Of a DNA stretch of 64,000 bases, positions 205 to 62,589 are shown piece after piece (positions within the stretch are counted from its first letter, which is position 1; each line of letters starts with the position of its first letter). Position numbers and translations under genes: made by a program. The notes beneath the pieces were generated by a model, which saw only the letters and a program-made list of their open reading frames with translations, was not told the DNA's origin and did no database searches. The DNA is from Octopus bimaculoides (Eukaryota): contig NC_068990.1 of the NCBI RefSeq assembly GCF_001194135.2, positions 88,551,180 to 88,615,179 of the forward strand, in the 5' to 3' direction.

Positions 205-375
205 ATATTACAAGAGTTGAATGTGGACCTCCAAAAGATGTTGTTGGTGCAAAGAAGTCCTACACTAACACCTCCTATAAATCTGAAGTGACCTACACAT
301 GTCCAGGAAAAGAAATATTAAAATCGTTATGTAAAGAGAACTCTAAATGGACTCCAGTTGCATCTAATTGTAAAG
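205..375 (+). CDS. Exon S1, Sushi/CCP domain (class a)
   Basis: ctag|AT..AAAG|gtaaat; 171 nt; VECGPPKDVVGAKKSYTNTSYKSEVTYTCPGKEILKSLCKENSKWTPVASNCK (C-x-x-P, YTC, C-x5-W, C). Confidence 0.88.
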
Positions 376-2121
376 GTAAATAGGTTCTCTCTTGTTGTCT
401 TTGCCTACGTATTTTTGTTTAATTATTTTGTCAAATATTTTTGTCAGGGGAAGAATAGTTGAATCCATGACAATTTCCATTGTATTTGTGGCTGGTTTGA
501 GGGAGAGCGAAAGCTAAGCTCAGACCAGATAACTTCCCAAACATTTGTGACAGAGTGAACTTCATTGAAACTATCCAAGGATCAGGTAATGGTATTAATT
601 TTGGTGATGGATTAAACACGCCAGCCAAGAACAGCAAATGAGGAATCTTGTTCTCTCCAGCAGGCTTCTACTAGTTTCTGACCATTATATTTCATTCGCA
701 AGGCTTAGTTGTAAAGTAGATATTTAGCCATGCTACCACAAGTCCAGACAGTACCACATTAAGTTAATTTTTTTTCTACATTTACCTTTGTTCTTTATAC
801 ATTAGAAATTATTATTGTTGTTGTTGTTTTTGTTGTCTGCATTTTTGCATTTGTCTCAATTTTACTTTAATTCCAGTTACTAAGCTCCATTTTGTGAAAG
901 TAAAAGGTGCAGTTCTTGATACACCTAAGAAAACCTTGTGGGATAAGAAAAATGTAACAGCAGATGCGTGTGCACAAAAATGTCTATTTTATGCAGATTG
1001 TTTAATGTTTGAAATAGACAAAGGAAGTAGAACATGTTACTTCTCAAAGCAAAGTGCAGCTTCCTCCAAGAAATTAAAACCAATGAAAGGCAGAGATTAC
1101 TACCAACGAATAAAATGTAATTATTCTACGTGTTTCTCTTTACCTCTTTTTCTGAAATCTGTGATTTCATTTGTACTTCATAGTGTACAGAAAACCACTT
1201 CTGCAAAGACAGACAGGTTTATCTATAAGGACAGACATAAGTATATTCCAGAAATAAGCAACTTTACGAACTGTAATAACAGCCATTATTCATTTTGAAC
1301 ATTTTAAGCATGTTTTCAGTTGCTTCTTTCTCTGTGTGTAAGCAAGGAAATTCTTGTTATTTTACTTAAACCTGAGTAGTAGTAGTAGTAGTAGTAAGTA
1401 GTAAGTAGTAGTAGAGCTGGCTCAAGACAAACACCATGTCCATGGTGTTTTGGTTTGTTCTAAAACAACAGTAGTTCTCAGAGAGATGATCCACAGCAAT
1501 GGTCAATATATAAAACCACTCCATAATGAGTAGTATTCAGGCCAGGATCTTTCGTGTGATGGCAGGGTAATGCCTCTGTGATTGGAGCTTTGTAACTTTT
1601 TTCCTTATTCTTATAAAGAGTGATGTTGACTGCATTTTTGATGTCTGGAGGAAGTATACCATGCTCCCAGAATTATTCAAAAATAGGTTGTCCTTTTAAA
1701 ACTAATTATGCATCAGATGCTATATGACATTTAATGTGTCTGAGTATGAAATGTATTCCTTGTTTTCTTCCTTTTTCCTTTCTAGCGCATGATGAGATTT
1801 TACCAATTAAAAGCACTTCCATACCTGGGCAGGATACTTTTGGACAGCTGGAAAACGTGAGCTTAAAGGAGTGTGATAAAGTTTGTCATCAAACTCCAGG
1901 ATGTAAATCTTATGAGTATAAGGAAAAAGCTAAGACCTGTGATCGAAGTAATGCAACTCACTTGACACATGACCTTGAGCCCAATAAAGAGGGTTGGGAT
2001 ACTTACATCATTAGCCCAGGTCAGTAGAGTTTTTTAATTTTATTTATTGTGTGTTGCCACATATATGTGTGTGTTTGTGTGTACTTACACGTACATACAT
2101 GTGCATACAATATGCATACAT

Positions 2122-2153
<32 letters not shown>

Positions 2154-5100
2154 TTAACATCTATTTTTTATGCTGGTAGGGGTTGGCTGGTTTGACAGGA
2201 GCTGGTAAGGCCAAGAATTACACAAGGCTCCATTGTCTGTTTCACATGGTCTCCAAGTTATTAAGATAAAGGGAGCAGGTGAGTGAGGGGAGGAAATAAA
2301 CTGAGCGAGGTGTGAATGAATAGGGGTATGTAGTATGAGGCTACTTTGCTTTCAGGTGATAGAGAAGTGATGAGTGTTAGGGGATGAAGTGTGGGGGCAA
2401 GGTAGACAGGTCAGAGAGGATGGCAGTAGGGGAGGAACAGAGTCCCTCATGGACAAGCATTACCTTGGTGATTTTAAGATATCAATTTTGCTATGGTGGA
2501 TGGGTCTTCTGGAGGTGCCAAATATCTCGGTCCTATGCAATTTCCTTCATTAGGCTCAACTTCTTTATGCAGCTGTCTACATCCATACACACCACATGAT
2601 GAAATCAGTGCTTGCACACTGCATCTAATTGTTTTTATGCCTGACTTTTCTCTTAATACATGAGTGCTCTGTTGCATATGTACACTGACTTTGCACATCC
2701 AGTGGAGCAACTAACTTCATTCCTCTCAAAAATTGGTTTACATGTAATTTTATCTTAATGTGTGTGTATTCTACATGTAGTAAATGTAGACACTCACAAC
2801 TCTATATAGTAAGCCAAGAAATATTTTGCAGTTAATGGTAAATGGAATATTTCTTGATTTTGAAGTCCATGTAGGTTTGGTTAGTGAAGTACTATTTTTA
2901 TCGTTTAGGTTGCAAAAAGTATGTGTATTTGTGTTTGTGTGTGTGTGCATGCACATGCATGTGTGGTGGTTGTATCATGTTTTGAGGTGGTTTGCTGTAG
3001 ACCCTATATATGTGTGGATATAGTACTTAGTGTAGTATTTGAGATTATGCTTGCACAATAGAATATTGCTTAAGAGACAGTTACATTCTAAAGGGCAGGA
3101 TGAAGAGGTTCTACAGTTGCAGTTGTTGCCATCTTTAGGTTTTGATCCTCAATGCTTCACAGTCTCTTTCTCTCTCCCTCAGCTGTGGTAGCCAAGAATC
3201 CTCTTTTAATAGCATTTCTCACTCAGTTGAAGAGTGTAGCCGTGAGAGTTACTTCTTGACCTCACTGGTACTCATGCCACTAAAAAACACCCTGTATATT
3301 CTGTAAGGACATGTTTTCACAAAAGATTGGAAATGAATGACACTCCTTGCATGAGAGTGACAGTGAGTAGATATGTATGTCTATGCACATGCTCACTTAT
3401 TTGCTTGTATATGTTCATATAATATATAGGTATATAGGCATGTGTTGTAAATATATATATATATAAGATTATAAATTTCTTCAGTTTCTTTCACTCAATA
3501 TTATTCTCTAAATTTTTCGCGTGTGTGTATATATTGACCAGACATACATTTTATTTCATTAGGCATTATGTTACTAATAACCTATTGCTAGAACTCAAAA
3601 TATTTTGTTCCAAAGCATATGTATATTGAATTATATACATATGTATGTATATATGTATGTTTGTATGTTTATGAATATATAAATAAATATATGCATATAT
3701 TTGTATGCATATTCATACGTACAAGTATATATATAAATGTTTATGTTCGTATGTATGTATTTATATCTTCAATTTTATTCATTCATTATCTACATCTCAC
3801 CTTCCTCCTAACAAACACACTCCATTGGTATCAATTTCTCTTATCAATCCCAGATTTCTATAATACTGACTGTGGACCTCCAAAAGAAGTTGTTGATGCA
3901 GTGAAGACCTACAAAACCACCACTTATAAATCTGAAGTGTCCTATACTTGCCCAAAAGGAGAACAACTGAAGTCAACATGTGGAAAGGACAACAAATGGA
4001 CTCCAGTAGCATCTGCTTGTAACGGTAACGTAAATAGCTTCTCTTCTCTTGTCTTTGTCAAAGTAATTTTGTTCCATCTTTGCATGTTAAATGTCTTTGT
4101 CAGAGGAAGACTGAGTCCATAATAGTTTCCATGATGTTTGTGACAGGTGGGAGAGAGAGGGAAGCTCTCTTCACACCAGAGACCTCTACAAATTCTTACA
4201 AAAGAGTTTAGAGTCATAATTAGGAAAATCAATAAGAATGTGATGTTCATGTCTTTATCAAGGGTTATGTAAAGTGAACTGAACTGGACTGAGAATCAAA
4301 CTGTAATCTTTGGCTTACACCATTCATCCCATATTTATGCTAAAAGAACAACTTGGGAAAAATACTTAGGGCCACTTCCTGCATGGAAAACAAATAGTAA
4401 AGGGGCTACTTGTTCAATGAAAATATTTTTATTAATCAAAATTTCAACCTCATTTCTTGTTAAAATTAGGCTTATTCTGATCATGAAATTAAGAAGAGTC
4501 AGCCTCATAAATAAGAGAGTCAGCCTCATAAATAAGAGAGTCAGCCTCATAAATAAGAGAGTCAGCCTCATAAATATAATCACTTTTTTTTTTTTTTCAT
4601 TTCATTGAAAGTATAACTTTGATAATTTAAAATTTCTTAGCTTGCTACCTTAAGGTGTGAGTGTCCACATTTATTACATATTTATATTTATTCGTTACAT
4701 GATAGTAGAAGGAAAATTATATTGTTTCCTAGGACAAGACATGACAAAATCAGAAAAGTGATGGGTTTTAGCCTTTTCCATAGCTAGTTGCATTTAGTTA
4801 CATCTTTTTACATTCTCAGTTCAAATTCAAACAAGATGTGCTTCGTCTTATTTACTTCTGAGGTTGATAAAACAAGTGCTAGTCAAGTACTGAAGTTTAT
4901 TTATATTCACTACACAGTGTGTGGCCTTGTGTTTGAGTTAGGAACTATCTTCAGTAATATTGTTACCATTAATAATAATTATAATTATTCTTGTTATTAA
5001 GACTGATAGATTGACAGAATCATTTGAGTATCAGACAAAATGTGTTGTGTCATTTTTCTGGCGTTTTAGCTTCAGAGTTCAAATGCAACTGATGTAAGCA

Positions 5101-18081: not shown

Positions 18082-18115
<34 letters not shown>

Positions 18116-22427: not shown

Positions 22428-22474
<47 letters not shown>

Positions 22475-35673: not shown

Positions 35674-35709
<36 letters not shown>

Positions 35710-44549: not shown

Positions 44550-44582
<33 letters not shown>

Positions 44583-46964: not shown

Positions 46965-46996
<32 letters not shown>

Positions 46997-49272: not shown

Positions 49273-49322
<50 letters not shown>

Positions 49323-54995: not shown

Positions 54996-55060
<65 letters not shown>

Positions 55061-58000: not shown

Positions 58001-60630
58001 NNNNNNNNNNNNNNNNNNNNNNNNNNNNNNNNNNNNNNNNNNNNNNNNNNNNNNNNNNNNNNNNNNNNNNNNNNNNNNNNNNNNNNNNNNNNNNNNNNNN
58101 NNNNNNNNNNNNNNNNNNNNNNNNNNNNNNNNNNNNNNNNNNNNNNNNNNNNNNNNNNNNNNNNNNNNNNNNNNNNNNNNNNNNNNNNNNNNNNNNNNNN
58201 NNNNNNNNNNNNNNNNNNNNNNNNNNNNNNNNNNNNNNNNNNNNNNNNNNNNNNNNNNNNNNNNNNNNNNNNNNNNNNNNNNNNNNNNNNNNNNNNNNNN
58301 NNNNNNNNNNNNNNNNNNNNNNNNNNNNNNNNNNNNNNNNNNNNNNNNNNNNNNNNNNNNNNNNNNNNNNNNNNNNNNNNNNNNNNNNNNNNNNNNNNNN
58401 NNNNNNNNNNNNNNNNNNNNNNNNNNNNNNNNNNNNNNNNNNNNNNNNNNNNNNNNNNNNNNNNNNNNNNNNNNNNNNNNNNNNNNNNNNNNNNNNNNNN
58501 NNNNNNNNNNNNNNNNNNNNNNNNNNNNNNNNNNNNNNNNNNNNNNNNNNNNNNNNNNNNNNNNNNNNNNNNNNNNNNNNNNNNNNNNNNNNNNNNTATT
58601 CATCCCCACAAAATTGAAAGGTAAATTTGACCTTGGTTTAATCTGAACTGATGGCCAAATGAGCCTGATTACTTATTGTAAAGCATTTCTTGTAATACTC
58701 TAATTAGTACACATCATCATCATCATCATTTAGTTTTCTATGCTGGCATGGGTTGGACAGTTTGATAGTGTCCAATGAACTGTCGAGCTGCATTAAACCC
58801 AGTGTCATCTTTGACATAGTTTCCATCACTGGATTCCTTTCCTAACACTAACCACTTTACAGTATGTACTGGATCCCTTTCCTTGGTACTAGTGAGGTCA
58901 CCAGTAACTTGCAAGACAAAATAAAGAAAGGGAAACAAAAAGACCCCTCAGCTGAGTGGGAGTGTATTTGAGAGAGTGGGAGGTATATTTGTACCATGTA
59001 TTGAAGACAAAGGTATGATAGAGCAACAAGCATAGGTGTCTTACTATAGAGGAGATACACAGCTACTCTATATTATGTGATGATGGGTAAGAGTAACTGG
59101 AAGATAGATAAAGTTGGTGGTGGAAGAGTACTAGATCTTGCTCTCAAGGTAAAAGACGATGAATATAAGGGAGAATGTAGATTGTAGATGGAGAAGGAAG
59201 AAAAGGATGGGTAATTTCATAAGGATGTTGGAAGAGATTGGGCTAGAATTGGTTGTCTTGAGTGAAGAAAGAAAATGAAGATTTGAATGCTGGTAAGTAT
59301 CGATATGAAGAGATGGAAGTGACCGAGGAAGGAGGAGGTGACAAATTAGAGTAGCAATGTCATATATTTGTTAGTAGATGAGAAATTAGGGAGGTGATAT
59401 GTCGGGTTTTATAGTGGAGGGAGGTTAGAGTATGATGAAATGTGGAAGTTATGGGTGTTGATCAATTCCTACCTCAAAGTTTTGGCTTAATTTCTATGAT
59501 GGAATATCATTTATTTTGTTGTAAGTGTTATTGTTTATTGGTTTCAATTTTGTTTTAATTCTAGATCCTCAGATCCATTTTGTGAAAGTAAAAGGTGCAG
59601 CTCTTACTGTAGCTGGCAAAATATTTTGGAATAAGGAAAATGTAACAGCAAAAGCCTGTGCAGAAAAGTGTTTGTCTGTCCCAAATTGTTTATCATTTGA
59701 AATAAATAATGAAAATGGAAAATGTTTCTTATCAAAGCAAGCTGCAAGTTCCTCCGAGAAAATAAAGAAAGTCAAAAGCAAAGATTACTACCAACGAGTA
59801 AAATGTAATTATTCTTAGTATTTTATTATTGAAATTATCCTCTCCTCANNNNNNNNNNAAGTGTTTGTCTGTCCCAAATTGTTTATCATTTGAAATAAAT
59901 AATGAAAATGGAAAATGTTTCTTATCAAAGCAAGCTGCAAGTTCCTCCGAGAAAATAAAGAAAGTCAAAAGCAAAGATTACTACCAACGAGTAAAATGTA
60001 ATTATTCTTAGTATTTTATTATTGAAATTATCCTCTCCTCATCTTCTGAAATTTGTGATTGCATTTGAATTTCTTGGAATAATTATGGACAACTATTTCT
60101 GTAAAGACATTGATAGGTTCATCTACATATAACACTAAACATAGACATGTTCCTGTAAAACAAAAACAATATTAAGAACTATAAATACTCTTAAAACATT
60201 GTCATACAGCATTTGTTCACCTTGAACATTTCTATGGATGTTTTCAGTTGTATTTTGTGTGTGTGTGTGTATGTGTGTGTGTTTGTATGAGTGGAGGTGT
60301 ATAAAATAAATTTCTCGTTTTCTATTTTGTTTCAGTTGATGAAGGGCCTGTTATGATGAAGAAGGTTGGCATACCAAAGAAGGCTACTTTAGGACAGCTT
60401 AAGGATAAGACCTTAAAGGAGTGTAATAAGGCTTGTGAACAATATACAGGATGTAACTCTTATCAGTACAATGCTGAATCTAAGTTGTGTGATCTGAGTA
60501 ATGTGACTCAGTTAACTGATGAACTTAAACCCAACGATGGAGAATGGGATATATACTTAACAAACCCAGGTCAGTAGAGTGCTTCTATTTCATTTGTTGT
60601 GTGCATGCCTTTGTGTATTTACATATATAA

Positions 60631-60668
<38 letters not shown>

Positions 60669-62589
60669 ACATCTATCTATTTATGTGTCTATTTATTTAT
60701 ATACATAAGCATATATATACAGGTATGTTGGTCGAAGCAGGAAAAATAGAACTCAAAGTATGAGTATATGTATAGCTCTAGAGAAGATTAATGGAGTTCG
60801 TTCTTTACTTCAATTGTTTGATTATGACATTTATTAATAAATGTGATTATTGTATTTGGGAACTATGATACTCCAAACTTATCAGGTAAGCTAACTGGAA
60901 TAAAATATGTAAATATCCATCATTTTTATACCTTTCCTATAGTACTCTGTAACTACATACCAGTTTACTTGGAGACTAACTTTAGGATTTACAAATTGGA
61001 CTGGTGACGTTCTGTTAAAGCATGGATTATCTGGATTTCTAAATCTATCATGGCTCAATTTTGTTTGTCTGGTTTCCTTTTCTTCACAGAGAGCTTACAA
61101 GATATTTCACCAGGCTCCTTAACCATTTCCTTTCATGTGATATATGTATGTCTGTATGTGTGTGCAGATGTCTTCAGTTTGTTATACAGTCAATATCTTT
61201 TATTCTAGATTTGTCCTTATCTCCTCATTCTCCCCCTCCTCCTCCTGCCATAGATTCACCGTTGATATCAGTTTCTCTTATCACTTCCAGTTGTTACAAA
61301 AGTTAACTGTGGACCTCCAAAGGATGTTGTTGGTGCAAAGAAGTCCTACACTGACACCACCTATAAATCTGAAGTGACCTACACATGTCCAGGAGGACAA
61401 CAGTTGAAGTCAAAGTGTAAAGATGACAATAAATGGACTCCAGTTGCATCCAATTGTAAAGGTAATGTAAATAGGTTCTCTTTTGCTGTCTCTTTCTAGG
61501 TTTTTTTATTAAATATCTTTGTCAGAGAAAGAATGACTGTATCCACGACAATTTCCATGGTATTTGTGGCTGATTAAAGAGAGAGAGAAACCTATCCTCA
61601 GAGAAGATAACTTCCTAAATCTATGCAATACAGAGAGCATAATTAAAGCTATCCAAGGTTCAGACAATGGTATTATCTTGGATAATGGATTAAATCTGCC
61701 AAACGAGAGCAGCAAGTGAGGAAGTGTGTTGTCTCCAGCAGGCTTCAGCATATTTTGTATCTAACATATTCCATTCAAAATACTTCATCACGAAGCAGAT
61801 TTTTAATTATGGAGCCATAAGTCCTCACAATACCACATTCTTGTTAAGTAAAATCTACAGCTCTACCTCAGCTAATCTTGGAAGTTTTTCTCTTAATTTC
61901 TAACTTCAGCTTTATTTCCCACACTTTGTTTCATCCTCCAAAACTCAGTACACTACAATGCACTGATTTTTCTTTACTAGAAAAACTTCTGATGCTCTAA
62001 TGGTCTTCCATTCCACCATCCTAAATCATTATGAGACAAATAATAATAGTGCTTTTAGATGGAAAAAGAGGCAACACTTTTCAATAGAAAGATGTTAGTA
62101 GCATTACCTCCAATACTTGGTTGCTATTTTGTGTTGTTGACCCACCCCTGGCAAGAATGAAACATAACTTTTGAGTTCAAATCCTGCTAATATCAACTCT
62201 GCCTTTTCAGGCCCATTAAAATTTTTAAGAAACCAGTCTAATGTAGGAATCAATTTAATTGATTAACTTCTACCTCAAATTTTTGTCTTTTTTCTACATC
62301 ATTGTTGTTTTTGGTGTTTACATTTGTCTCAATCTTCCTTTAATTCCAGTTTCTAAGATCCATTTTGTGAAAGTAAAAGGTGCAATTCTGGATGTACCTG
62401 GAAAAATTTTGGAGAGTAATAAAAGTGTAACAGCAGATGTTTGTGCAGAAAGATGTTTATCTTACAAAAATTGTTTATCATTTGAAATGAAGAGAAAAAG
62501 TGGAAAATGTTATTTATCAAAGGAAACTGCAGCTTCCTCCAAGAAAATAAAAGCAGCCAAAACCAAAGATTACTACCAACGAGTAAATG
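205..62589 (+). CDS. Interior of a giant multi-exon gene encoding tandem Sushi(CCP)-PAN/Apple-PAN/Apple repeats; 41 exons, 2883 codons in window, open at both ends
   Basis: 41 exons traced by hand, each with yAG acceptor and GT donor, all phase 1-1, all lengths multiples of 3. No internal stop and no stop at junction codons. Four conserved Cys per exon. No ATG/signal or terminal exon found. Confidence 0.88.
877..1116 (+). CDS. Exon A1, PAN/Apple domain type A
   Basis: ttccag|TT..AAAT|gtaatt; 240 nt; CAQKCLFYADCLMFEIDKGSRTCYFS...DYYQR (CxxxC-x5-C-xxF...C-Y/F-L/F PAN core). Confidence 0.88.
1786..2019 (+). CDS. Exon B1, PAN/Apple domain type B1
   Basis: tctag|CG..CCAG|gtcagt; 234 nt; CDKVCHQTPGCKSYEYKEKAKTCDRSNATH...GWDTY. 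Confidence 0.88.
2122..2255 (-). mobile_element. SINE 3' tail fragment ending in a (GAT)n tail
   Basis: (CAT)n followed by the reverse complement of a ..ccaacccatgccagcatg..gttaaatgatgatg type tail that recurs at 22250, 35730 and 58730. Confidence 0.55.
2490..2710 (-). mobile_element. RTE-type LINE 3' ORF remnant
   Basis: Minus-strand LHWMCKVSVH..LREKSGIKTIRCSVQ and MDVDSCIKK..DRDIW, matching the RTE C-terminal region also seen at 30195-30580. Confidence 0.6.
3854..4024 (+). CDS. Exon S2, Sushi/CCP (class b)
   Basis: cccag|AT..AACG|gtaacg; 171 nt; DCGPPKEVVDAVKTY...YTCPKGEQLKSTCGKDNKWTPVASACN. Confidence 0.88.
4492..4575. repeat. 21-bp minisatellite x4 (aagagagtcagcctcataaat)
   Basis: Four adjacent copies visible; paralogous introns (near 14385, 23765, 37135) carry a single related copy. 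Confidence 0.9.
5258..5497 (+). CDS. Exon A2, PAN/Apple type A
   Basis: ttctag|AT..AAAT|gtaatt; 240 nt; CAEKCLSDQKCLSFELNKENRKCYLS. Confidence 0.9.
6854..7084 (+). CDS. Exon B2, PAN/Apple type B2 (one codon shorter)
   Basis: ttccag|CT..CCAG|gtcagt; 231 nt; CSEACFQYIGCSTYQYNEQTKLCDLSNMT...SWDIY. Confidence 0.9.
7530..7697 (+). CDS. Exon S3, Sushi/CCP (class c, 56 codons)
   Basis: ttccag|TC..AAAG|gtaatg; 168 nt; DCGPPKDVSG...YTCQDGEILKAACKENNKWAPEVSCK. Confidence 0.88.
9496..9735 (+). CDS. Exon A3, PAN/Apple type A
   Basis: ttctag|TT..AAAC|gtaatt; 240 nt; CANECLTDKKCLSFEIMKKSGMCYLS. Confidence 0.9.
9975..10455 (-). mobile_element. RTE-type LINE reverse transcriptase fragment (decayed)
   Basis: Minus strand: DEMQFGF..TDAIFLVR..LYLAFTEVEKAFDRV..GVHQGLILSPLL..LLYSDYLVLIAESLSDLQKKFQVWK, with stops. 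Confidence 0.85.
10683..10819. other. Inverted repeat (about 34-bp arms) upstream of exon B3; MITE-like relic or RNA hairpin
   Basis: tttgtacacccctcttctgatggtgtgcttttgt ... acaaaagcacaccattagaaaaggaaggtacaaa; homologues at 30593-30700 and 54282-54419. Confidence 0.75.
11040..11273 (+). CDS. Exon B3, PAN/Apple type B1 (not in the ORF track)
   Basis: ttccag|CC..CCAG|gtcagt; 234 nt; CYEACYKNSECHSFEYNKKAKLCDHSNATH...GWDTY. Confidence 0.88.
12020..12560 (+). mobile_element. RTE-type LINE RT fragments (decayed)
   Basis: AIKDRKVGKAAGSSGII..., LLYLALINIEKALIRV..., KVGIDGCLMKAIQSL..SKVRV. Confidence 0.7.
13156..13326 (+). CDS. Exon S4, Sushi/CCP (class d)
   Basis: ttccag|CT..GAAG|gtaatg; 171 nt; NCAPPREIVG...YTCPHGGKLKSKCGKDYKWTSVNSTCE. 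Confidence 0.88.
13988..14158 (+). CDS. Exon S5, Sushi/CCP (class e, second of doublet)
   Basis: tttcag|CT..AACG|gtaaca; 171 nt; DCGNPKDIAG...YTCPEGEQLKSVCEKNNKWTPVVETCN. Confidence 0.88.
15029..15268 (+). CDS. Exon A4, PAN/Apple type A (very Lys-rich)
   Basis: ttctag|AT..AAAT|gtaatt; 240 nt; CAEKCLSDKKCLSFEINKENGKCFLS. Confidence 0.9.
15279..15889 (-). mobile_element. Solo LTR, 611 bp, TGTAGT...ACTACA, 4-bp TSD ATTC
   Basis: Flanked by ATTC at 15275-15278 and 15890-15893; empty site gtaattattcttagtat in paralogous introns after A8 and A12; AATAAA on the minus strand near 15385; CpG-rich interior. Confidence 0.85.
16797..17030 (+). CDS. Exon B4, PAN/Apple type B2
   Basis: tttcag|CT..CCAG|gtcagt; 234 nt; CKNSCQQYTGCNSYQYNAEAKLCDLSNVT. 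Confidence 0.9.
17640..17950 (+). mobile_element. RTE-type LINE AP-endonuclease fragment
   Basis: NVGTLK..DVWCIQEVRWR..ISGKERKCKIFWVDN..GVSIFLDEN*MDKVIKIVRMCDRI. Confidence 0.75.
18116..18700. other. Assembly gap (others: 22475-22657, 45701-45710, 46546-46964, 49323-49332, 57747-58596, 59849-59858)
   Basis: N runs, several flanked by (TA)n or (TG)n microsatellites. Confidence 0.99.
19214..19384 (+). CDS. Exon S6, Sushi/CCP (class a)
   Basis: ttccag|TT..GAAG|gtaatg; 171 nt; NCGPPKDVVGAKKSY...YTCPGGQQLKSKCKDDNKWTPVASNCE. Confidence 0.88.
19963..20202 (+). CDS. Exon A5, PAN/Apple type A
   Basis: ttccag|TT..AATC|gtaatt; 240 nt; CAERCLSDKNCLSFEITEETGKCYLS. Confidence 0.9.
20789..20940. mobile_element. 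SINE fragment (tttcagtcatttga..gtacttattctat..ctaagttac), same family as 49686
   Basis: Clear similarity to 49700-49810. Confidence 0.55.
21391..21624 (+). CDS. Exon B5, PAN/Apple type B1 (not in the ORF track)
   Basis: atctag|CC..CCAG|gtcagt; 234 nt; CDHACHQTPGCNSYEYDKKAKFCDQSNATH. Confidence 0.88.
22085..22295 (+). mobile_element. SINE 3' portion with GAT tail
   Basis: ..aaccatccaacccataccagcatgaaaaatggacgttaaatgatgatg; same tail family as 2122, 35730 and 58730. Confidence 0.6.
22823..22993 (+). CDS. Exon S7, Sushi/CCP (class b)
   Basis: tttcag|CT..AAAG|gtaaca; 171 nt; NCGLPKDIVG...YTCSDGVQLKSICQKDNKWTPVTSSCK. Confidence 0.88.
24427..24666 (+). CDS. Exon A6, PAN/Apple type A
   Basis: ctttag|AT..AAGC|gtaatt; 240 nt; CAEKCLSDESCLSFEINKKNRKCYLS. 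Confidence 0.9.
24895..25245 (-). mobile_element. Non-LTR retrotransposon C-terminal fragment (CCHC knuckle region, R4/Dong/NeSL-like)
   Basis: KIETKALICMALEQALRTNNVKYRTDNTTESDKCRMC..IVSE..LAQCKYKGHNYVARMIHWELC..WY. Confidence 0.75.
25972..26205 (+). CDS. Exon B6, PAN/Apple type B2
   Basis: ttccag|TT..CCAG|gttagt; 234 nt; CDEACSQYAGCNSYQYNKKKKICDLSNVT. Confidence 0.9.
26307..26980 (+). mobile_element. Penelope-like element reverse transcriptase fragment
   Basis: DIKGLYTGISHNEGL..LAELVLSLNCFSF..GVAMGMRMGPIYANLFVG..YIDD..FHPALKF..YKHTDSH..SHP..SIPFSQ, with stops. Confidence 0.85.
27576..27743 (+). CDS. Exon S8, Sushi/CCP (class c, 56 codons)
   Basis: ttacag|TT..AAAG|gtaatg; 168 nt; NCGPPKDVVG...YTCQKGGILKATCKENRKWAPVVSCK. 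Confidence 0.88.
29401..29637 (+). CDS. Exon A7, PAN/Apple type A (one codon shorter)
   Basis: ttccag|TT..GATC|gtaatt; 237 nt; CVEKCSSDTNCLSFEITKGSGRCYLS. Confidence 0.88.
30195..30580 (-). mobile_element. RTE-type LINE C-terminal RT/thumb fragment
   Basis: YLGHKVSSGG..WAKF*ELLPLLVT..RLYGACV*TAMLHGSETWAVT..LERNEASML..LREK. Confidence 0.85.
30970..31203 (+). CDS. Exon B7, PAN/Apple type B1 (not in the ORF track)
   Basis: atctag|CC..CCAG|gtcagt; 234 nt; CDRACLQIPGCKSYEYHEKKKFCNPSNETH; the poly-A run keeps the frame. Confidence 0.88.
32323..32455 (-). mobile_element. RTE RT fragment, reverse-complement paralogue of 12354-12481
   Basis: Reverse complement tatttagcattgatcaacttagagaaagccttaatcatggtcacatg.. 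aligns to tatttagcattgatcaatatagagaaggccttgatcagagtcacatg.. Confidence 0.75.
32550..32780 (+). mobile_element. Non-LTR retrotransposon CCHC-region remnant
   Basis: CQLCHISVENITNLINN*PKMSTMYYFLM*HDVVTNTIYNAI. Confidence 0.55.
33384..33554 (+). CDS. Exon S9, Sushi/CCP (class d)
   Basis: ttccag|TT..GAAG|gtaagg; 171 nt; KCGRPRDIAG...YTCPDREELKSKCEKDRKWTSVDSVCE. Confidence 0.88.
34695..34865 (+). CDS. Exon S10, Sushi/CCP (class e)
   Basis: tttcag|TT..AACG|gtaaca; 171 nt; DCGNPKDIAG...YTCPEGEKLKSTCEKDNKWTPIVETCN. Confidence 0.88.
35675..36114 (-). mobile_element. SINE/retroelement remnant shared with 58712-59093
   Basis: (CAT)n plus reverse SINE tail and about 350 bp co-linear with 58712-59093 in the S15-A12 intron. 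Confidence 0.65.
36115..36995 (-). mobile_element. Truncated hAT (Charlie/SPIN/GTF2IRD2-like) DNA transposon: one TIR plus transposase C-terminus with dimerisation domain
   Basis: TIR-like caggagtgtcaaac at 36115; minus strand LSHFPCC..NPFAVNVETALVQIQMELIELQCNGTLKTKY..MPQL then FGSTYLC*QLFSVMKMNKTSHRSHLTDEHLQSI; empty site gggtaagag|taactgg at 59085-59100. Confidence 0.88.
37727..37966 (+). CDS. Exon A8, PAN/Apple type A
   Basis: ttctag|AT..AAAT|gtaatt; 240 nt; 4 nt different from A4. Confidence 0.9.
38691..38924 (+). CDS. Exon B8, PAN/Apple type B2
   Basis: tttcag|TAG..CCAG|gtcagt; 234 nt; CDKACQQYIRCNTYQYNAKSKVCDLSNVT; tandem CAGTAG acceptor. Confidence 0.88.
39740..40545 (+). mobile_element. 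Internally deleted non-LTR retrotransposon (R4/Dong-like)
   Basis: PKLRYID..AE.KRI..ETN joined to RKTRKFLMMHEAHHSCADTDHLHTKR..RGLISVEDYITIELKSL..YL..SKETLL. Confidence 0.65.
40850..41020 (+). CDS. Exon S11, Sushi/CCP (class a)
   Basis: tttcag|TT..AAAG|gtaatg; 171 nt; NCGPPKDVVGAKKSY...CKDDNKWTPVASNCK. Confidence 0.88.
43489..43728 (+). CDS. Exon A9, PAN/Apple type A
   Basis: ttccag|TT..AATG|gtaatt; 240 nt; CAEKCLSDKNCLSFEIKGESGKCYLS. Confidence 0.9.
45331..45564 (+). CDS. Exon B9, PAN/Apple type B1
   Basis: ttctag|CT..CCAG|gtcagt; 234 nt; CDHACHQTPGCNSYEYKERVMFCDRSNVTH. Confidence 0.9.
45876..46046 (+). CDS. Exon S12, Sushi/CCP (class b)
   Basis: tttcag|CT..AAAG|gtaaca; 171 nt; KCGPPKDIVG...YTCPDGIQLRSICQKHNKWTPVASSCK. 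Confidence 0.88.
47805..48044 (+). CDS. Exon A10, PAN/Apple type A
   Basis: ctttag|AT..AAGT|gtaatt; 240 nt; CAEKCLSGKSCLSFEINKENGKCYLS. Confidence 0.9.
49360..49680 (-). mobile_element. Mariner transposon 3' end (TIR plus transposase C-terminus)
   Basis: TIR-like tgttgggtcatcccataaataat; minus strand PPYLLDIAPSDYHLFCSLQNHFDGK..WKSIVKNEREYILD*. Confidence 0.8.
49686..50046 (-). mobile_element. tRNA-derived SINE (CORE-like motif ggcaccttgggcaagtg), octopus-like
   Basis: Minus-strand head ggctgtgtggtaagaaacttacttctcaaccacatgattctgggttcaatcccactgcatggcaccttgggcaagtg with box A/B-like elements; family identity recalled, not searched. Confidence 0.75.
50172..50405 (+). CDS. Exon B10, PAN/Apple type B2
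   Basis: ttccag|TT..CCAG|gttagt; 234 nt; CSEACNQYLRCNSYQYNEHDKICDLSNVT. Confidence 0.9.
50638..50890 (-). mobile_element. Mariner transposon 3' end, second family
   Basis: TIR-like gatgtctgatcaataagtatccggact; minus strand LKGRRFQDVEEI..EFQECFHQWK*RWIKCVASKG.EYFKGD*. Confidence 0.8.
51145..51395 (+). mobile_element. Degenerate hAT (Tip100/ZMYM1-like) dimerisation-domain fragment
   Basis: SLSATSASCEKPLSSLKQEDNYMTCSESEEKFSNLVFISMNK..VIDEFVNKK. Confidence 0.5.
51853..52020 (+). CDS. Exon S13, Sushi/CCP (class c, 56 codons)
   Basis: ttccag|TT..AAAG|gtaatg; 168 nt; NCGAPKDVAG...YTCQDGEELKATCKENKKWAPEVSCK. Confidence 0.88.
52451..52532 (+). mobile_element. SINE 3' tail fragment
   Basis: accagttgcatactggggttgatctaatcgactggccccctccccaaaactttcgggccttgtgcctaaagtagaaaagaat interrupts the paralogous intron block; family recalled from octopus repeats. 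Confidence 0.5.
53060..53299 (+). CDS. Exon A11, PAN/Apple type A
   Basis: ttctag|CT..AAAC|gtaatt; 240 nt; CAEKCISDNTCLSFEITKKSQKCYLS. Confidence 0.9.
53933..54095 (+). mobile_element. L1/Tx1-like LINE RT C-terminal remnant
   Basis: VKLLGAYFGPE..RKLSLKVRAEVVNYYI. Confidence 0.55.
54672..54905 (+). CDS. Exon B11, PAN/Apple type B1
   Basis: atctag|CC..CCAG|gtcagt; 234 nt; 1 nt different from B7. Confidence 0.9.
55824..55994 (+). CDS. Exon S14, Sushi/CCP (class d)
   Basis: ttccag|CT..GAAG|gtaaag; 171 nt; DCGPPRDIAG...YTCPREEKLVSKCEKDKKWTVVDSGCE. Confidence 0.88.
56120..56375 (+). mobile_element. Mariner transposase N-terminal (HTH) remnant
   Basis: YGDNALPY..W..FKNGQT..STSSTDKKIQKAQEMVL..VTIDGVA..ISYHSAYEII. 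Confidence 0.65.
56380..56668. mobile_element. hAT-type non-autonomous element end
   Basis: Ends in aaaaatggttgagaacccctg (reverse complement CAGGGGTTCTCAACC, a Charlie-type TIR). Confidence 0.55.
57557..57727 (+). CDS. Exon S15, Sushi/CCP (class e)
   Basis: tttcag|CT..AATG|gtaaca; 171 nt; DCGNPKDIAG...YTCPEGEKLKSICEKDNKWSPIVETCN. Confidence 0.88.
59565..59804 (+). CDS. Exon A12, PAN/Apple type A
   Basis: ttctag|AT..AAAT|gtaatt; 240 nt; CAEKCLSVPNCLSFEINNENGKCFLS. Confidence 0.9.
59859..60041 (+). other. Exact 183-bp duplicate of 59666-59848 across a 10-N gap (assembly overlap)
   Basis: Identical sequence on both sides of the gap; starts mid-exon without an acceptor. Confidence 0.85.
60336..60569 (+). 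CDS. Exon B12, PAN/Apple type B2
   Basis: tttcag|TT..CCAG|gtcagt; 234 nt; CNKACEQYTGCNSYQYNAESKLCDLSNVT. Confidence 0.9.
61291..61461 (+). CDS. Exon S16, Sushi/CCP (class a)
   Basis: ttccag|TT..AAAG|gtaatg; 171 nt; 1 nt different from S6. Confidence 0.88.
62350..62589 (+). CDS. Exon A13, PAN/Apple type A
   Basis: ttccag|TT..AATG|gtaatt; 240 nt; CAERCLSYKNCLSFEMKRKSGKCYLS. Confidence 0.9.

What the first reader, a model, noticed from the sequence alone, without database searches (positions are those of the whole stretch)
205..62589. Giant uninterrupted (Sushi-PAN-PAN)n protein gene: 41 intact symmetric exons, at least 2883 codons, open at both ends
Seen: 16 Sushi, 13 PAN-A and 12 PAN-B exons, each one domain with exactly four Cys. 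There is no stop or frameshift, and the only length variants are 3-nt deletions (168/171, 237/240, 231/234), while the introns are full of indels and transposon debris. Known: CCP and PAN/Apple modules are extracellular protein- and glycan-binding folds (complement regulators; HGF N-domain, factor XI apple domains, apicomplexan microneme adhesins). These PAN domains have only the 4-Cys core and lack the outer disulphide. Inference: a functional, very large secreted or surface recognition/adhesion protein. I do not recognise this repeating architecture as a named gene.
Basis: partly seen in the sequence, partly recalled or inferred. Interest (0 to 1): 0.85.

Follow-up and report, generated by a model that had tools for sequence, protein, structure and literature searches.

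The report
Giant octopus Sushi–PAN–PAN repeat gene
This 62-kb stretch is the transcribed middle of a huge octopus-only gene made of 41 intact one-domain exons (Sushi, PAN, PAN repeated); its relatives end in a GON domain and are known only as uncharacterised predictions or venom-gland cDNAs, so the architecture is real, under selection and undescribed, but its function is still unknown.

Summary
There are 41 exons on the + strand (16 Sushi, 13 PAN-A, 12 PAN-B). All are phase 1-1 with AG/GT sites and four Cys each, giving 8649 nt = 2883 codons without a stop or frameshift.

New findings:
- The exons form a 13-exon, ~21-kb super-repeat (S-A-B-S-A-B-S-A-B-S-S-A-B), present three times plus the start of a fourth.
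- All seven assembly gaps lie in introns. One is an unmerged 183-nt contig overlap, and five abut microsatellites.
- RNA contigs from four runs show five exact neighbour-to-neighbour junctions and one partial one, at low depth.
- At least 558 substitutions occurred with no stop (≥34 expected). dN/dS between units is ~0.85, so frame and scaffold are conserved while surfaces drift or diversify.
- Pfam, PDB profiles and an AlphaFold model confirm PAN/apple domains. Sequence profiles confirm CCP.
- Relatives occur only in octopods. The orthologue is O. sinensis LOC118764742 (83% identity). In O. bimaculoides a continuous same-strand array of ≥568 kb is split into six gene models and ends in one GON domain.
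- Short relatives (GON-Abd-1, GON-Sep-2) carry signal peptides.

Verdict: an internal part of a functional, giant, probably secreted multivalent binding protein. It is a new variant of known domain kinds. Its ends, tissue and ligand are unknown.

The parts
205..375 (+). Sushi/CCP exon
   Evidence: exon 1, unit 1 position 1; 171 nt, phase 1-1, AG/GT, 4 Cys, no stop
877..1116 (+). PAN-A exon
   Evidence: exon 2, unit 1 position 2; 240 nt, phase 1-1, AG/GT, 4 Cys, no stop; donor 1116 joined to 1786 in RNA contig
1786..2019 (+). PAN-B exon
   Evidence: exon 3, unit 1 position 3; 234 nt, phase 1-1, AG/GT, 4 Cys, no stop; acceptor 1786 joined from 1116 in RNA contig
3854..4024 (+). Sushi/CCP exon
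   Evidence: exon 4, unit 1 position 4; 171 nt, phase 1-1, AG/GT, 4 Cys, no stop
5258..5497 (+). PAN-A exon
   Evidence: exon 5, unit 1 position 5; 240 nt, phase 1-1, AG/GT, 4 Cys, no stop; donor 5497 used in RNA contig
6854..7084 (+). PAN-B exon
   Evidence: exon 6, unit 1 position 6; 231 nt, phase 1-1, AG/GT, 4 Cys, no stop; RNA contig starts exactly at 6854
7530..7697 (+). Sushi/CCP exon
   Evidence: exon 7, unit 1 position 7; 168 nt, phase 1-1, AG/GT, 4 Cys, no stop
9496..9735 (+). PAN-A exon
   Evidence: exon 8, unit 1 position 8; 240 nt, phase 1-1, AG/GT, 4 Cys, no stop; donor 9735 joined to 11040 in RNA contig
11040..11273 (+). PAN-B exon
   Evidence: exon 9, unit 1 position 9; 234 nt, phase 1-1, AG/GT, 4 Cys, no stop; acceptor 11040 joined from 9735
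13156..13326 (+). Sushi/CCP exon (extra Sushi of the unit)
   Evidence: exon 10, unit 1 position 10; 171 nt, phase 1-1, AG/GT, 4 Cys, no stop
13988..14158 (+). Sushi/CCP exon
   Evidence: exon 11, unit 1 position 11; 171 nt, phase 1-1, AG/GT, 4 Cys, no stop
15029..15268 (+). PAN-A exon
   Evidence: exon 12, unit 1 position 12; 240 nt, phase 1-1, AG/GT, 4 Cys, no stop; donor 15268 joined to 16797
16797..17030 (+). PAN-B exon
   Evidence: exon 13, unit 1 position 13; 234 nt, phase 1-1, AG/GT, 4 Cys, no stop; acceptor 16797 joined from 15268
19214..19384 (+). Sushi/CCP exon
   Evidence: exon 14, unit 2 position 1; 171 nt, phase 1-1, AG/GT, 4 Cys, no stop; donor 19384 (second of two GT) joined to 19963
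19963..20202 (+). PAN-A exon
   Evidence: exon 15, unit 2 position 2; 240 nt, phase 1-1, AG/GT, 4 Cys, no stop; acceptor 19963 and donor 20202 both seen in RNA contigs
21391..21624 (+). PAN-B exon
   Evidence: exon 16, unit 2 position 3; 234 nt, phase 1-1, AG/GT, 4 Cys, no stop; acceptor 21391 joined from 20202
22823..22993 (+). Sushi/CCP exon
   Evidence: exon 17, unit 2 position 4; 171 nt, phase 1-1, AG/GT, 4 Cys, no stop
24427..24666 (+). PAN-A exon
   Evidence: exon 18, unit 2 position 5; 240 nt, phase 1-1, AG/GT, 4 Cys, no stop
25972..26205 (+). PAN-B exon
   Evidence: exon 19, unit 2 position 6; 234 nt, phase 1-1, AG/GT, 4 Cys, no stop
27576..27743 (+). Sushi/CCP exon
   Evidence: exon 20, unit 2 position 7; 168 nt, phase 1-1, AG/GT, 4 Cys, no stop
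29401..29637 (+). PAN-A exon
   Evidence: exon 21, unit 2 position 8; 237 nt, phase 1-1, AG/GT, 4 Cys, no stop
30970..31203 (+). PAN-B exon
   Evidence: exon 22, unit 2 position 9; 234 nt, phase 1-1, AG/GT, 4 Cys, no stop; 99.6% identical to exon 35
33384..33554 (+). Sushi/CCP exon (extra Sushi of the unit)
   Evidence: exon 23, unit 2 position 10; 171 nt, phase 1-1, AG/GT, 4 Cys, no stop
34695..34865 (+). Sushi/CCP exon
   Evidence: exon 24, unit 2 position 11; 171 nt, phase 1-1, AG/GT, 4 Cys, no stop
37727..37966 (+). PAN-A exon
   Evidence: exon 25, unit 2 position 12; 240 nt, phase 1-1, AG/GT, 4 Cys, no stop
38691..38924 (+). PAN-B exon
   Evidence: exon 26, unit 2 position 13; 234 nt, phase 1-1, AG/GT, 4 Cys, no stop
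40850..41020 (+). Sushi/CCP exon
   Evidence: exon 27, unit 3 position 1; 171 nt, phase 1-1, AG/GT, 4 Cys, no stop
43489..43728 (+). PAN-A exon
   Evidence: exon 28, unit 3 position 2; 240 nt, phase 1-1, AG/GT, 4 Cys, no stop
45331..45564 (+). PAN-B exon
   Evidence: exon 29, unit 3 position 3; 234 nt, phase 1-1, AG/GT, 4 Cys, no stop
45876..46046 (+). Sushi/CCP exon
   Evidence: exon 30, unit 3 position 4; 171 nt, phase 1-1, AG/GT, 4 Cys, no stop
47805..48044 (+). PAN-A exon
   Evidence: exon 31, unit 3 position 5; 240 nt, phase 1-1, AG/GT, 4 Cys, no stop
50172..50405 (+). PAN-B exon
   Evidence: exon 32, unit 3 position 6; 234 nt, phase 1-1, AG/GT, 4 Cys, no stop
51853..52020 (+). Sushi/CCP exon
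   Evidence: exon 33, unit 3 position 7; 168 nt, phase 1-1, AG/GT, 4 Cys, no stop
53060..53299 (+). PAN-A exon
   Evidence: exon 34, unit 3 position 8; 240 nt, phase 1-1, AG/GT, 4 Cys, no stop
54672..54905 (+). PAN-B exon
   Evidence: exon 35, unit 3 position 9; 234 nt, phase 1-1, AG/GT, 4 Cys, no stop
55824..55994 (+). Sushi/CCP exon (extra Sushi of the unit)
   Evidence: exon 36, unit 3 position 10; 171 nt, phase 1-1, AG/GT, 4 Cys, no stop
57557..57727 (+). Sushi/CCP exon
   Evidence: exon 37, unit 3 position 11; 171 nt, phase 1-1, AG/GT, 4 Cys, no stop
59565..59804 (+). PAN-A exon
   Evidence: exon 38, unit 3 position 12; 240 nt, phase 1-1, AG/GT, 4 Cys, no stop
60336..60569 (+). PAN-B exon
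   Evidence: exon 39, unit 3 position 13; 234 nt, phase 1-1, AG/GT, 4 Cys, no stop
61291..61461 (+). Sushi/CCP exon
   Evidence: exon 40, unit 4 position 1; 171 nt, phase 1-1, AG/GT, 4 Cys, no stop; 99.4% identical to exon 14
62350..62589 (+). PAN-A exon
   Evidence: exon 41, unit 4 position 2; 240 nt, phase 1-1, AG/GT, 4 Cys, no stop
205..17030 (+). super-repeat unit 1 (13 exons: S-A-B-S-A-B-S-A-B-S-S-A-B)
   Evidence: same exon order as units 2 and 3; exon identity to them 72-98% by position; orthologous to residues 1666-2637 of O. sinensis XP_036361601.1 together with exon 14, 83.4% identity, one gap
19214..38924 (+). super-repeat unit 2 (13 exons)
   Evidence: colinear with unit 3 at offsets of 21.6-24.3 kb; only exons plus about 100-400 nt of flanking intron still align
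40850..60569 (+). super-repeat unit 3 (13 exons)
61291..62589 (+). start of super-repeat unit 4 (runs off the window)
   Evidence: exons 40-41 are 99.4% and 93.7% identical to exons 14-15
59849..60041 (.). scaffolding artefact: 10-N gap plus a second copy of 59666-59848 (false partial PAN-A, in intron 38)
   Evidence: 183 nt before and after the gap are identical; TRF period 193, 2 copies

Best explanation
The window is an internal piece of one very large protein-coding gene of an octopus. The species is most probably Octopus bimaculoides; the placement is inferred, not proven.

The gene is built only from one-domain, phase 1-1 exons in the order Sushi(CCP), PAN-A, PAN-B, with one extra Sushi every 13 exons. 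The 13-exon, ~21-kb block has been copied in tandem at least three and a bit times, by unequal crossing-over. Patches of gene conversion followed. The introns decayed freely through indels, microsatellites and transposon fragments.

The gene is transcribed at a low level, and each exon is spliced to its neighbour. The product is a lysine-rich (15% K, pI ~9), disulphide-rich string of about 70-residue modules carrying N-x-S/T sequons. This piece alone is 2883 residues, about 324 kDa.

Inferred mechanism:
- The protein enters the secretory pathway through a signal peptide encoded upstream of the window, and probably ends in a GON domain as its relatives do.
- It works as a multivalent extracellular binder. 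The PAN/apple modules would supply many slightly different glycan- or protein-binding surfaces.
- The CCP modules would act as spacers or further binding sites.
- Selection keeps the frame, the cysteines and the fold core, but lets the surfaces drift or diversify.

Shown: anatomy, domain identity, intactness, splicing, family relations. Inferred: secretion, the GON end for this gene, ligand binding and tissue.
For: - Anatomy: 41 intact phase 1-1 exons, 2883 codons. No decayed copies. 13-exon super-repeat.
- Constraint: 0 stops against >=34 expected from >=558 substitutions. Exon length differences are only multiples of 3, while intron flanks carry 27 indel events per kb. 52 of 214 columns of the S-A-B unit are invariant, including all 12 Cys, the CCP Trp and an N-x-T sequon.
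- Transcription: exact GT..AG junctions in RNA contigs with 0-1 mismatches. These are 1116->1786, 9735->11040 and 5497->exon 6, 15268->16797, and 19384->19963 and 20202->21391. All join neighbouring exons.
- Folds: Pfam PAN_1 6e-48 and Sushi 8e-12 on 756 aa. PDB profile hits to DAF, CR1, CR2, MCP and TgMIC4. AlphaFold pLDDT 83, with Foldseek hits to factor XI/kallikrein apple, SML-2 lectin, HGF N and plasminogen PAN.
- Family: only octopod proteins share the repeat. The orthologue is O. sinensis LOC118764742, 83.4% identical over 972 aa in the same exon order.
- GON end: P0002 and GON-Abd-1 end in a GON domain. GON-Abd-1 and GON-Sep-2 begin with hydrophobic signal-like N-termini (sequences).
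- Larger array: in O. bimaculoides, intact family exons continue between the NCBI gene models. The array ends in one GON domain followed by a CACHD1-like gene.
- Composition: 15.1% Lys, pI 8.95, 35 sequons, 164 Cys.
Against: - dN/dS between units is 0.83-0.87 and is not clearly below 1. Most of the sequence is therefore weakly constrained, as also expected for young redundant repeats.
- RNA support is thin. Contigs have depth 2-4 in a few runs of unknown tissue. One deep 2026 RNA run, sampled at 6%, showed no reads on exons 1-4.
- No B->S junction was seen directly. There is only a hint: an RNA contig (X43) stops matching 4 nt before exon 14.
- No signal-peptide, TM, GON or stop exon lies in the window.
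- I could not show that the window lies in the O. bimaculoides cluster. No overlap with L001-L004 was found, and no database protein matches the window at more than 84%.
- Six gaps remain unspanned.
Confidence: 0.72

Rival explanations
1. Cassette reservoir. The array is not read through as one giant mRNA. It serves as a store of interchangeable symmetric exons. A signal-peptide exon, a few S/A/B exons and the distant GON exons are combined by alternative splicing into many short secreted proteins, like the 465-aa GON-Abd-1.
For: Every exon is phase 1-1, so any subset stays in frame. The only transcript-derived complete relatives are short: GON-Abd-1 at 465 aa (signal, A, B, S, GON) and GON-Sep-2 at 291 aa. 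Only one GON end was found in the four sampled O. bimaculoides loci. The O. sinensis model uses 2643 aa from a 152.7-kb range.
Against: All six junctions seen in RNA join immediate neighbours; none skips an exon. GON-Abd-1 comes from another genus and is only 47-50% identical, so it may be a separate small gene.
Confidence: 0.1
2. Young, redundant duplicates drifting neutrally. The exons are intact only because the duplications are recent. The low-level RNA is transcriptional noise or read-through, and this part of the array adds no function.
For: dN/dS is 0.83-0.87 between units. Exon identity (85.5%) is only a little above that of the intron flanks (80.4%). Expression is low.
Against: The copies are not young: exon divergence is 10-28% and deep introns no longer align. 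With >=558 substitutions, >=34 stops are expected and none is seen. No frameshifting length change occurs in 41 exons, against 27 indels per kb beside them. All 164 Cys and all 82 splice sites are kept. Unit 1 keeps its exon order and 83% identity in another species.
Confidence: 0.08
3. Assembly artefact. The three-fold repeat comes from mis-scaffolding of a repeat-rich region (haplotigs or mis-joined contigs), so the real gene has fewer, or differently ordered, exons.
For: Seven gaps lie in 64 kb. One proven scaffolding error duplicates 183 nt. Short-read contigs are under 500 nt here and cannot confirm long-range order.
Against: The units differ by 2-28% in exons and are largely unalignable in introns, far beyond allelic difference. 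Five gaps are explained by microsatellites. The same 13-exon period is seen in the gap-poor locus L002 of O. bimaculoides, and the same exon order in O. sinensis. Independent DNA runs from 2015-2025 hold 0.86-0.89 of the sampled words of the first 9 kb of the window.
Confidence: 0.07
4. Several separate genes lie inside the window, as the fragmentary NCBI models of the cluster would suggest.
For: In O. bimaculoides the array is annotated as at least six genes of 709-4083 aa.
Against: The window holds no signal-peptide-like, GON or stop-bearing terminal exon, and no break in the exon pattern. The NCBI models start at internal Met residues in mid-domain. Intact, correctly phased exons lie between them, so the splits look like prediction artefacts.
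Confidence: 0.03

Closest known systems
Octopus sinensis uncharacterized protein LOC118764742 (XP_036361601.1, 2643 aa); also the O. bimaculoides models LOC128248837/38/40 and LOC106869402, and O. vulgaris CAI9728790.1 (4470 aa)
   Same: Same S-A-B repeat with occasional S-S doublets. Residues 1666-2637 of the O. sinensis protein match window exons 1-14 in the same order at 83.4% identity. The others are 50-64% identical paralogues.
   Different: All are automatic predictions without names, experiments or papers. They begin at internal Met residues in mid-domain and are pieces of a longer array. None contains units 2-4 of the window.
Cephalopod 'GON' proteins from posterior salivary (venom) gland transcriptomes: GON-Abd-1 (Abdopus aculeatus, R4G2C1) and GON-Sep-2 (Acanthosepion pharaonis, R4FJA6). 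I recall these as the 'metalloprotease GON-domain' class of Ruder et al. 2013, J Mol Evol. That is from memory; the paper was not found in the searchable library.
   Same: GON-Abd-1 holds one PAN-A, one PAN-B and one Sushi that are 47-50% identical to the window's modules. The O. bimaculoides array ends in the same GON domain.
   Different: They are short (465 and 291 aa), with a signal peptide and one copy of each module. The window has 41 modules, with no signal or GON exon. Whether the window's gene is expressed in the salivary gland is unknown.
Human complement receptor 1 (CR1) long homologous repeats; similar logic in apolipoprotein(a) kringle IV-2 repeats (own knowledge)
   Same: It works like them at the genome level. 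Blocks of several one-domain, phase 1-1 exons are duplicated in tandem as a higher-order unit of about 20 kb, and homogenised in patches. The Sushi modules hit CR1 and CR2 by profile.
   Different: CR1 is made of CCP modules only and its ligands (C3b/C4b) are known. Here two thirds of the modules are PAN domains. There is no evidence of a complement role or of copy-number polymorphism.
PAN/apple-domain binders: factor XI and prekallikrein apple domains, HGF N domain, plasminogen PAN, Toxoplasma MIC4 and Sarcocystis SML-2 lectin
   Same: Same fold by Pfam and by Foldseek (E 4e-5 to 1e-3; rmsd 1.7-3 A over 76-89 residues for plasminogen and HGF).
   Different: Sequence identity is only 11-27%. 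The window's PAN modules have the 4-Cys core without the outer apple disulphide. They alternate with CCP modules in a fixed triplet, which none of these proteins does.
Multi-PAN giants of other lophotrochozoans, e.g. Dimorphilus gyrociliatus DgyrCDS10690 (3398 aa) and DgyrCDS14473 (1964 aa)
   Same: Very long proteins with 20 or more PAN domains, found as distant hits at 22-24% identity.
   Different: No Sushi modules and no GON domain. They carry SUEL-lectin and F5/8-C domains instead, so the S-A-B unit is not shared.

Membership tests
Sushi / CCP / SCR domain (Pfam PF00084) | About 60 residues with four conserved Cys and a conserved Trp between Cys3 and Cys4 | tested here: met
   All 16 exons give 55-56 residues in the pattern C-x25-C-x9-C-x5-W-x5/6-C. 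C6, C32, C42, W48 and C55 are invariant.
Sushi / CCP / SCR domain (Pfam PF00084) | Profile score above the family's curated threshold | tested here: met
   45.7 bits over four copies against a cut-off of 20.7. A single exon alone scores 19.5 bits, just below. The profile of the 16 window exons hits CR2 at 2.8e-11, CR1 at 2.5e-9, and also MCP, DAF and MASP-2.
Sushi / CCP / SCR domain (Pfam PF00084) | Beta-sandwich CCP fold with Cys1-Cys3 and Cys2-Cys4 disulphides | tested here: inconclusive
   The AlphaFold model of exon 1 has pLDDT 84.7 and is all-beta. Foldseek against the PDB gave no significant match for this 56-residue model. Disulphide pairing cannot be read with these tools.
PAN / apple domain (Pfam PF00024 PAN_1) | Profile score above the curated threshold | tested here: met
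   Single PAN-A exon 41.7 bits and single PAN-B exon 31.9 bits, against a cut-off of 21.4. Six copies together give 161 bits.
PAN / apple domain (Pfam PF00024 PAN_1) | Alpha helix packed on a beta sheet (hairpin-loop fold) | tested here: met
   The model of a family S-A-B triplet (55-65% identical to the window's) has pLDDT around 90 in both PAN parts, each with one helix plus strands. Foldseek hits include factor XI/kallikrein apple, TgMIC4, SML-2, HGF N and plasminogen PAN. The model was made on a homologue, because spliced window peptides were not accepted by the tool.
PAN / apple domain (Pfam PF00024 PAN_1) | Apple subtype: third, outer disulphide linking the N- and C-termini (6 Cys) | tested here: not met
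   Each PAN exon has exactly 4 Cys, spaced C-x3-C-x5-C-x11-C. These are core-only PAN domains as in the HGF N domain, not apple domains in the strict sense.
Cephalopod PAN-Sushi-GON secreted proteins (GON-Abd-1 type) | Homologous PAN-A, PAN-B and Sushi modules | tested here: met
   47-50% identity over 214-245 residues to GON-Abd-1. The S-A-B profile matches it at 199 and 67 bits.
Cephalopod PAN-Sushi-GON secreted proteins (GON-Abd-1 type) | C-terminal GON domain (PF08685) | tested here: inconclusive
   No GON-coding sequence in the window (best tblastn E=2.4), but the gene is open at its 3' end. The O. bimaculoides array ends in one GON domain. A link between the window and that end is not shown.
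Cephalopod PAN-Sushi-GON secreted proteins (GON-Abd-1 type) | N-terminal signal peptide | tested here: inconclusive
   None in the window, which is open at its 5' end. No O. bimaculoides or O. sinensis model has one either; they all start in mid-domain.
Cephalopod PAN-Sushi-GON secreted proteins (GON-Abd-1 type) | Expression in the posterior salivary (venom) gland | not testable with these tools
   Run and sample names are coded and carry no tissue label.
SVEP1 (sushi, von Willebrand factor type A, EGF and pentraxin domain-containing protein 1), the automatic name of several relatives | vWA, EGF, HYR and pentraxin domains besides Sushi | tested here: not met
   Pfam finds only PAN, Sushi and (in relatives) GON domains in the window peptide and in P0002 and P0008. 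The 'SVEP1-like' label rests on Sushi similarity alone.

The most novel reading that the evidence does not exclude
The window is about one tenth of a single transcription unit that covers the whole same-strand exon array seen in O. bimaculoides. That array runs for at least 568 kb on CM046610.1 (88.248-88.816 Mb), with one GON end and no internal terminal exon found in the sampled parts. At the observed density of about 1.5-2 kb per exon and about 70 codons per exon, this would be about 300-370 exons and about 20,000-26,000 residues. That is a titin-scale secreted protein restricted to octopods. It would have grown from a small signal-PAN-Sushi-GON salivary-gland gene of the kind still present in cuttlefish.
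Probability: 0.2. Interest if true: 0.85.

Novelty: new variant of a known kind. Interest (0 to 1): 0.58.

Why it matters
If the reading is right, octopods have inflated a small secreted PAN-Sushi-GON gene into one of the largest exon arrays known in an invertebrate. Cuttlefish still have the small form, and it was first seen in venom-gland cDNA.

The array is a clean natural example of how symmetric phase-1 domain exons and higher-order tandem duplication build giant extracellular proteins. The frame and the fold core stay fixed while the surfaces change quickly.

It also shows that current octopus annotations cut this locus into arbitrary 'uncharacterized' or 'SVEP1-like' pieces. Any expression, venom-proteome or gene-family count that uses those models is therefore distorted.

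Finding its tissue and ligand would show whether this is a saliva or venom component, a mucus or adhesion scaffold, or a broad-spectrum recognition protein in an animal without adaptive immunity.

Tried and rejected
- Spanning the gaps with public DNA runs. Logan contigs are under 500 nt here and none crosses a gap.
B->S junctions, junctions into the GON exons and exons 17-41 were therefore never tested with RNA.
- Placing the window in the O. bimaculoides cluster. blastn against L001-L004 gave only paralogous matches of 89% or less. The O. sinensis orthologous locus was too long to fetch, and its neighbour L005 is not orthologous.
- The profile search of the big protein database with the S-A-B alignment returned only three fragments.
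The triplet model was therefore built from homologues.
- Foldseek on the isolated Sushi model gave no significant hit.
- Seven literature searches were run. Four returned nothing (GON domain + cephalopod; metalloprotease GON-domain; octopus + PAN domain + sushi; octopus + apple domain). The other three returned papers, but in the five opened for 'GON' the word was absent from the main text or was part of a surname. A sixth paper, opened for GON, PAN, Sushi and apple, mentioned Sushi only as a domain of unrelated DECA-CTX toxins.
- SVEP1 membership is rejected because the defining domains are absent.
- A bacterial or viral reading is rejected. The sequence has eukaryotic introns and only octopus homologues.
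- Hidden pseudo-exons are rejected.
- Intronic ORFs are only transposon debris. There is one weak RVT_1 hit, and three others have no Pfam hit.
Full report
1. CHECK OF THE OBSERVATION

The window is AT-rich (about 34% G+C) and has seven runs of N. Stop-free stretches on the + strand repeatedly encode three kinds of Cys-containing peptide. tblastn with one peptide of each kind found 16 Sushi, 13 PAN-A and 12 PAN-B hits, all on the + strand, plus one partial PAN-A.

The flanks show a pyrimidine tract and AG before every hit and GT after it. Every exon starts with two bases of a split codon and ends with one, so all are phase 1-1. The refined list runs from 205 to 62589. Lengths are 171/168, 240/237 and 234/231 nt, and each exon has four Cys. 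The total is 8649 nt = 2883 codons without a stop. A permissive search with all 41 exon peptides found no degenerate copies elsewhere in the window.

2. THE GAPS

All seven gaps lie in introns.

- Gap 59849-59858, which the scan program did not list, is flanked by two identical 183-nt copies. It is an unmerged contig overlap, and it creates a false partial PAN-A copy.
- Gaps 18116 and 22475 lie inside (AT)n and (GT)n runs on both sides.
- Gaps 45701, 46546 and 49323 abut such runs on one side.
- Gap 57747 starts 19 nt after the donor of exon 37. DNA contigs reach 240-310 nt into it from the right but do not cross it.

The exons either side of each gap are consecutive members of the repeating pattern. 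The gapped introns are no longer than their paralogues. Because all exons are symmetric, the reading frame does not depend on the gaps. What cannot be excluded is a whole hidden unit or a foreign exon.

3. HIGHER-ORDER STRUCTURE

The exon order is S-A-B-S-A-B-S-A-B-S-S-A-B. It occurs three times (exons 1-13, 14-26, 27-39) and a fourth copy begins with exons 40-41.

Corresponding exons of different units are 72-99.6% identical, and the value changes abruptly from position to position. For example, unit position 9 (exons 22 and 35) is 99.6% identical between units 2 and 3, while unit position 10 (exons 23 and 36) is 83.6%. Only the exons and about 100-400 nt of flanking intron still align between units. 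Around the near-identical exons the flanks are about 85% identical with many indels. This points to old tandem duplication of a ~21-kb block, followed by patchy gene conversion. It does not fit haplotype or assembly duplication.

4. SELECTION

A column-wise parsimony count gives at least 558 substitutions among the copies. Between 5.5% and 6.8% of random point changes in these codons would create a stop. At least 34 stops are therefore expected, and none is seen.

Intron flanks carry 27 indel events per kb, whereas exon lengths differ only by 3 nt.

Pairwise dN/dS between units is 0.83-0.87, and exon identity (85.5%) is only a little above flank identity (80.4%). So the frame, the splice sites, all 164 Cys and about a quarter of the columns are held fixed (52 of 214 invariant). 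The rest of the sequence changes almost freely. That fits fast-evolving or diversifying surfaces on a fixed scaffold. It does not fit pseudogenes.

5. TRANSCRIPTION

Public RNA runs of the same organism hold parts of the exons. Their contigs show exact GT..AG junctions:

- 1116->1786
- 9735->11040, and 5497->exon 6 (partial)
- 15268->16797
- 19384->19963 and 20202->21391

The 19384 junction uses the second of two possible Sushi donors and so keeps the fourth Cys. All junctions join neighbouring exons. Depth is 2-4, so expression in the sampled libraries is low. Tissue labels are hidden.

No B->S junction was seen directly. One contig stops matching 4 nt before exon 14 and continues for 107 nt with sequence that is not the intron. 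That fits a splice from a PAN-B exon.

6. DOMAIN IDENTITY

- Pfam: PAN_1 6e-48 and Sushi 8e-12 on the first 756 residues. Single PAN exons pass the curated cut-off. A single Sushi exon falls just short, at 19.5 against 20.7 bits.
- PDB profiles: a profile of the 16 window Sushi exons hits CR2, CR1, MCP, DAF and MASP-2. The S-A-B profile also hits TgMIC4.
- Structure: an AlphaFold model of a family triplet (pLDDT 83) matches factor XI and kallikrein apple domains, TgMIC4, the galactose-binding lectin SML-2, the HGF N domain and plasminogen PAN.
- The isolated Sushi model (pLDDT 85, all-beta) gave no significant Foldseek hit.
- The PAN modules have only the 4-Cys core.
- The spliced peptide is 15% Lys, with pI 8.95, and carries 35 N-x-S/T sequons, one of them invariant in PAN-B across the 12 aligned S-A-B triplets.

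7. RELATIVES AND SURROUNDINGS

Only octopod proteins share the repeat: O. bimaculoides, O. sinensis, O. vulgaris and Abdopus. Beyond them the scores drop to generic Sushi-repeat proteins, GON-domain proteins and PAN-only annelid giants.

O. sinensis LOC118764742, residues 1666-2637, matches exons 1-14 in the same order at 83.4% identity. It is the orthologue. The identity is similar to that between O. bimaculoides and O. vulgaris copies. That similarity, and the style of the gaps, suggest the window is from O. bimaculoides.

In that species the family occupies CM046610.1 from 88.248 to 88.816 Mb, all on one strand. The NCBI models (1133, 709, 1865, 761, 4083 and 1067 aa) start in mid-domain. 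Intact, correctly phased exons lie between them. The array ends in a single GON domain, followed by a CACHD1-like gene.

Short relatives are GON-Abd-1 (signal, PAN-A, PAN-B, Sushi, GON) and cuttlefish GON-Sep-2 (signal, Sushi, GON). By their names and from my memory of Ruder et al. 2013, they come from posterior salivary gland transcriptomes.

I could not place the window inside the cluster, and no database protein is identical to it.

8. INTERPRETATION

Best explanation (0.72): an internal part of a functional, giant, secreted multivalent binder. It is built by tandem duplication of a 13-exon block and read exon by exon.

Rivals:
- Cassette-type alternative use of the exons (0.10)
- Neutral young duplicates (0.08)
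- Assembly artefact (0.07)
- Several genes inside the window (0.03)

The most novel reading not excluded is that the whole ≥568-kb array is one gene of about 20,000-26,000 residues (0.2).

9. NOVELTY

The domain kinds and the logic of symmetric-exon duplication are well known; CR1 long homologous repeats are the closest analogy. The fixed Sushi-PAN-PAN unit, its 13-exon super-repeat, its GON-ending family and its scale are octopod-specific. As far as seven full-text searches could show, they are undescribed. They exist only as fragmentary automatic gene models. I rate it a new variant of a known kind, with interest 0.58.

Noticed in passing
window 59849-60041: A seventh assembly gap (10 N) is missing from the scan program's list. 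The 183 nt before it are repeated exactly after it, which gives a false partial PAN-A copy at 59859-59997. The true intron 38 is 193 nt shorter than written.
   Followed up: yes
window 18085-18715, 22428-22680, 45732-45750, 46965-47003, 49276-49318: Five of the seven gaps sit in or next to (AT)n or (GT)n microsatellites. They are most simply unresolved simple repeats inside introns.
   Followed up: yes
window 50402-50634: A 117-nt tandem duplication (2 copies, 80% alike) starts 4 nt before the end of exon 32, so it copies that exon's donor site. Reading on past the first donor meets a stop at once (GGT TAG), so the second donor copy could not extend the open frame.
   Followed up: partly
window 10080-10277 (minus strand), 36653-37015 (minus), 39743-40556 (plus): These are intronic open stretches that look like transposon debris. 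The first has a weak reverse-transcriptase match (RVT_1, E=0.0015). The others have no Pfam match.
   Followed up: partly
window 4481-4576: A 21-nt minisatellite (4.4 copies, 96% alike) lies in intron 4. The read-laying tool's filter tripped just beside it, at 4570-4615.
   Followed up: no
all 16 Sushi exons, e.g. window 369-377: Each Sushi exon ends in two in-phase GT donors 6 nt apart (T|GTAAAG|GT). Use of the first would delete the fourth Cys. RNA shows the second in use at exon 14. Whether the first is ever used is unknown.
   Followed up: partly
L002 1-10000 and 35974-44047; L004 1122-10000 and 33251-37744 (O. bimaculoides CM046610.1): Intact, correctly phased Sushi/PAN exons lie outside and between the NCBI gene models. 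Those models start at internal Met residues in mid-domain, so the annotation cuts one continuous array into pieces.
   Followed up: yes
O. sinensis CM016867.1, gene LOC118764742 (no DNA returned): The 2643-aa model spans 152.7 kb. At the window's density of about 1.5 kb per exon, that range would hold about 100 exons, against roughly 38 in the model. The model therefore either skips many exons or has much longer introns; L005 in the same species has introns of 3-8 kb.
   Followed up: no
window exon pairs 22/35, 12/25, 14/40: These exon pairs are 98.3-99.6% identical, although the alignments that include their flanks are about 85-87% identical with many indels. This is patchy gene conversion, or very local constraint that also covers synonymous sites.
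   Followed up: partly
RNA run X28, contig 22: An RNA contig carries a Sushi-exon end (…CCTGTAAAG) joined to a PAN-A start (TTGCTGAAATCCATTTT…). This does not match any window exon exactly, so a paralogous part of the array outside the window is transcribed and spliced in the same way.
   Followed up: no
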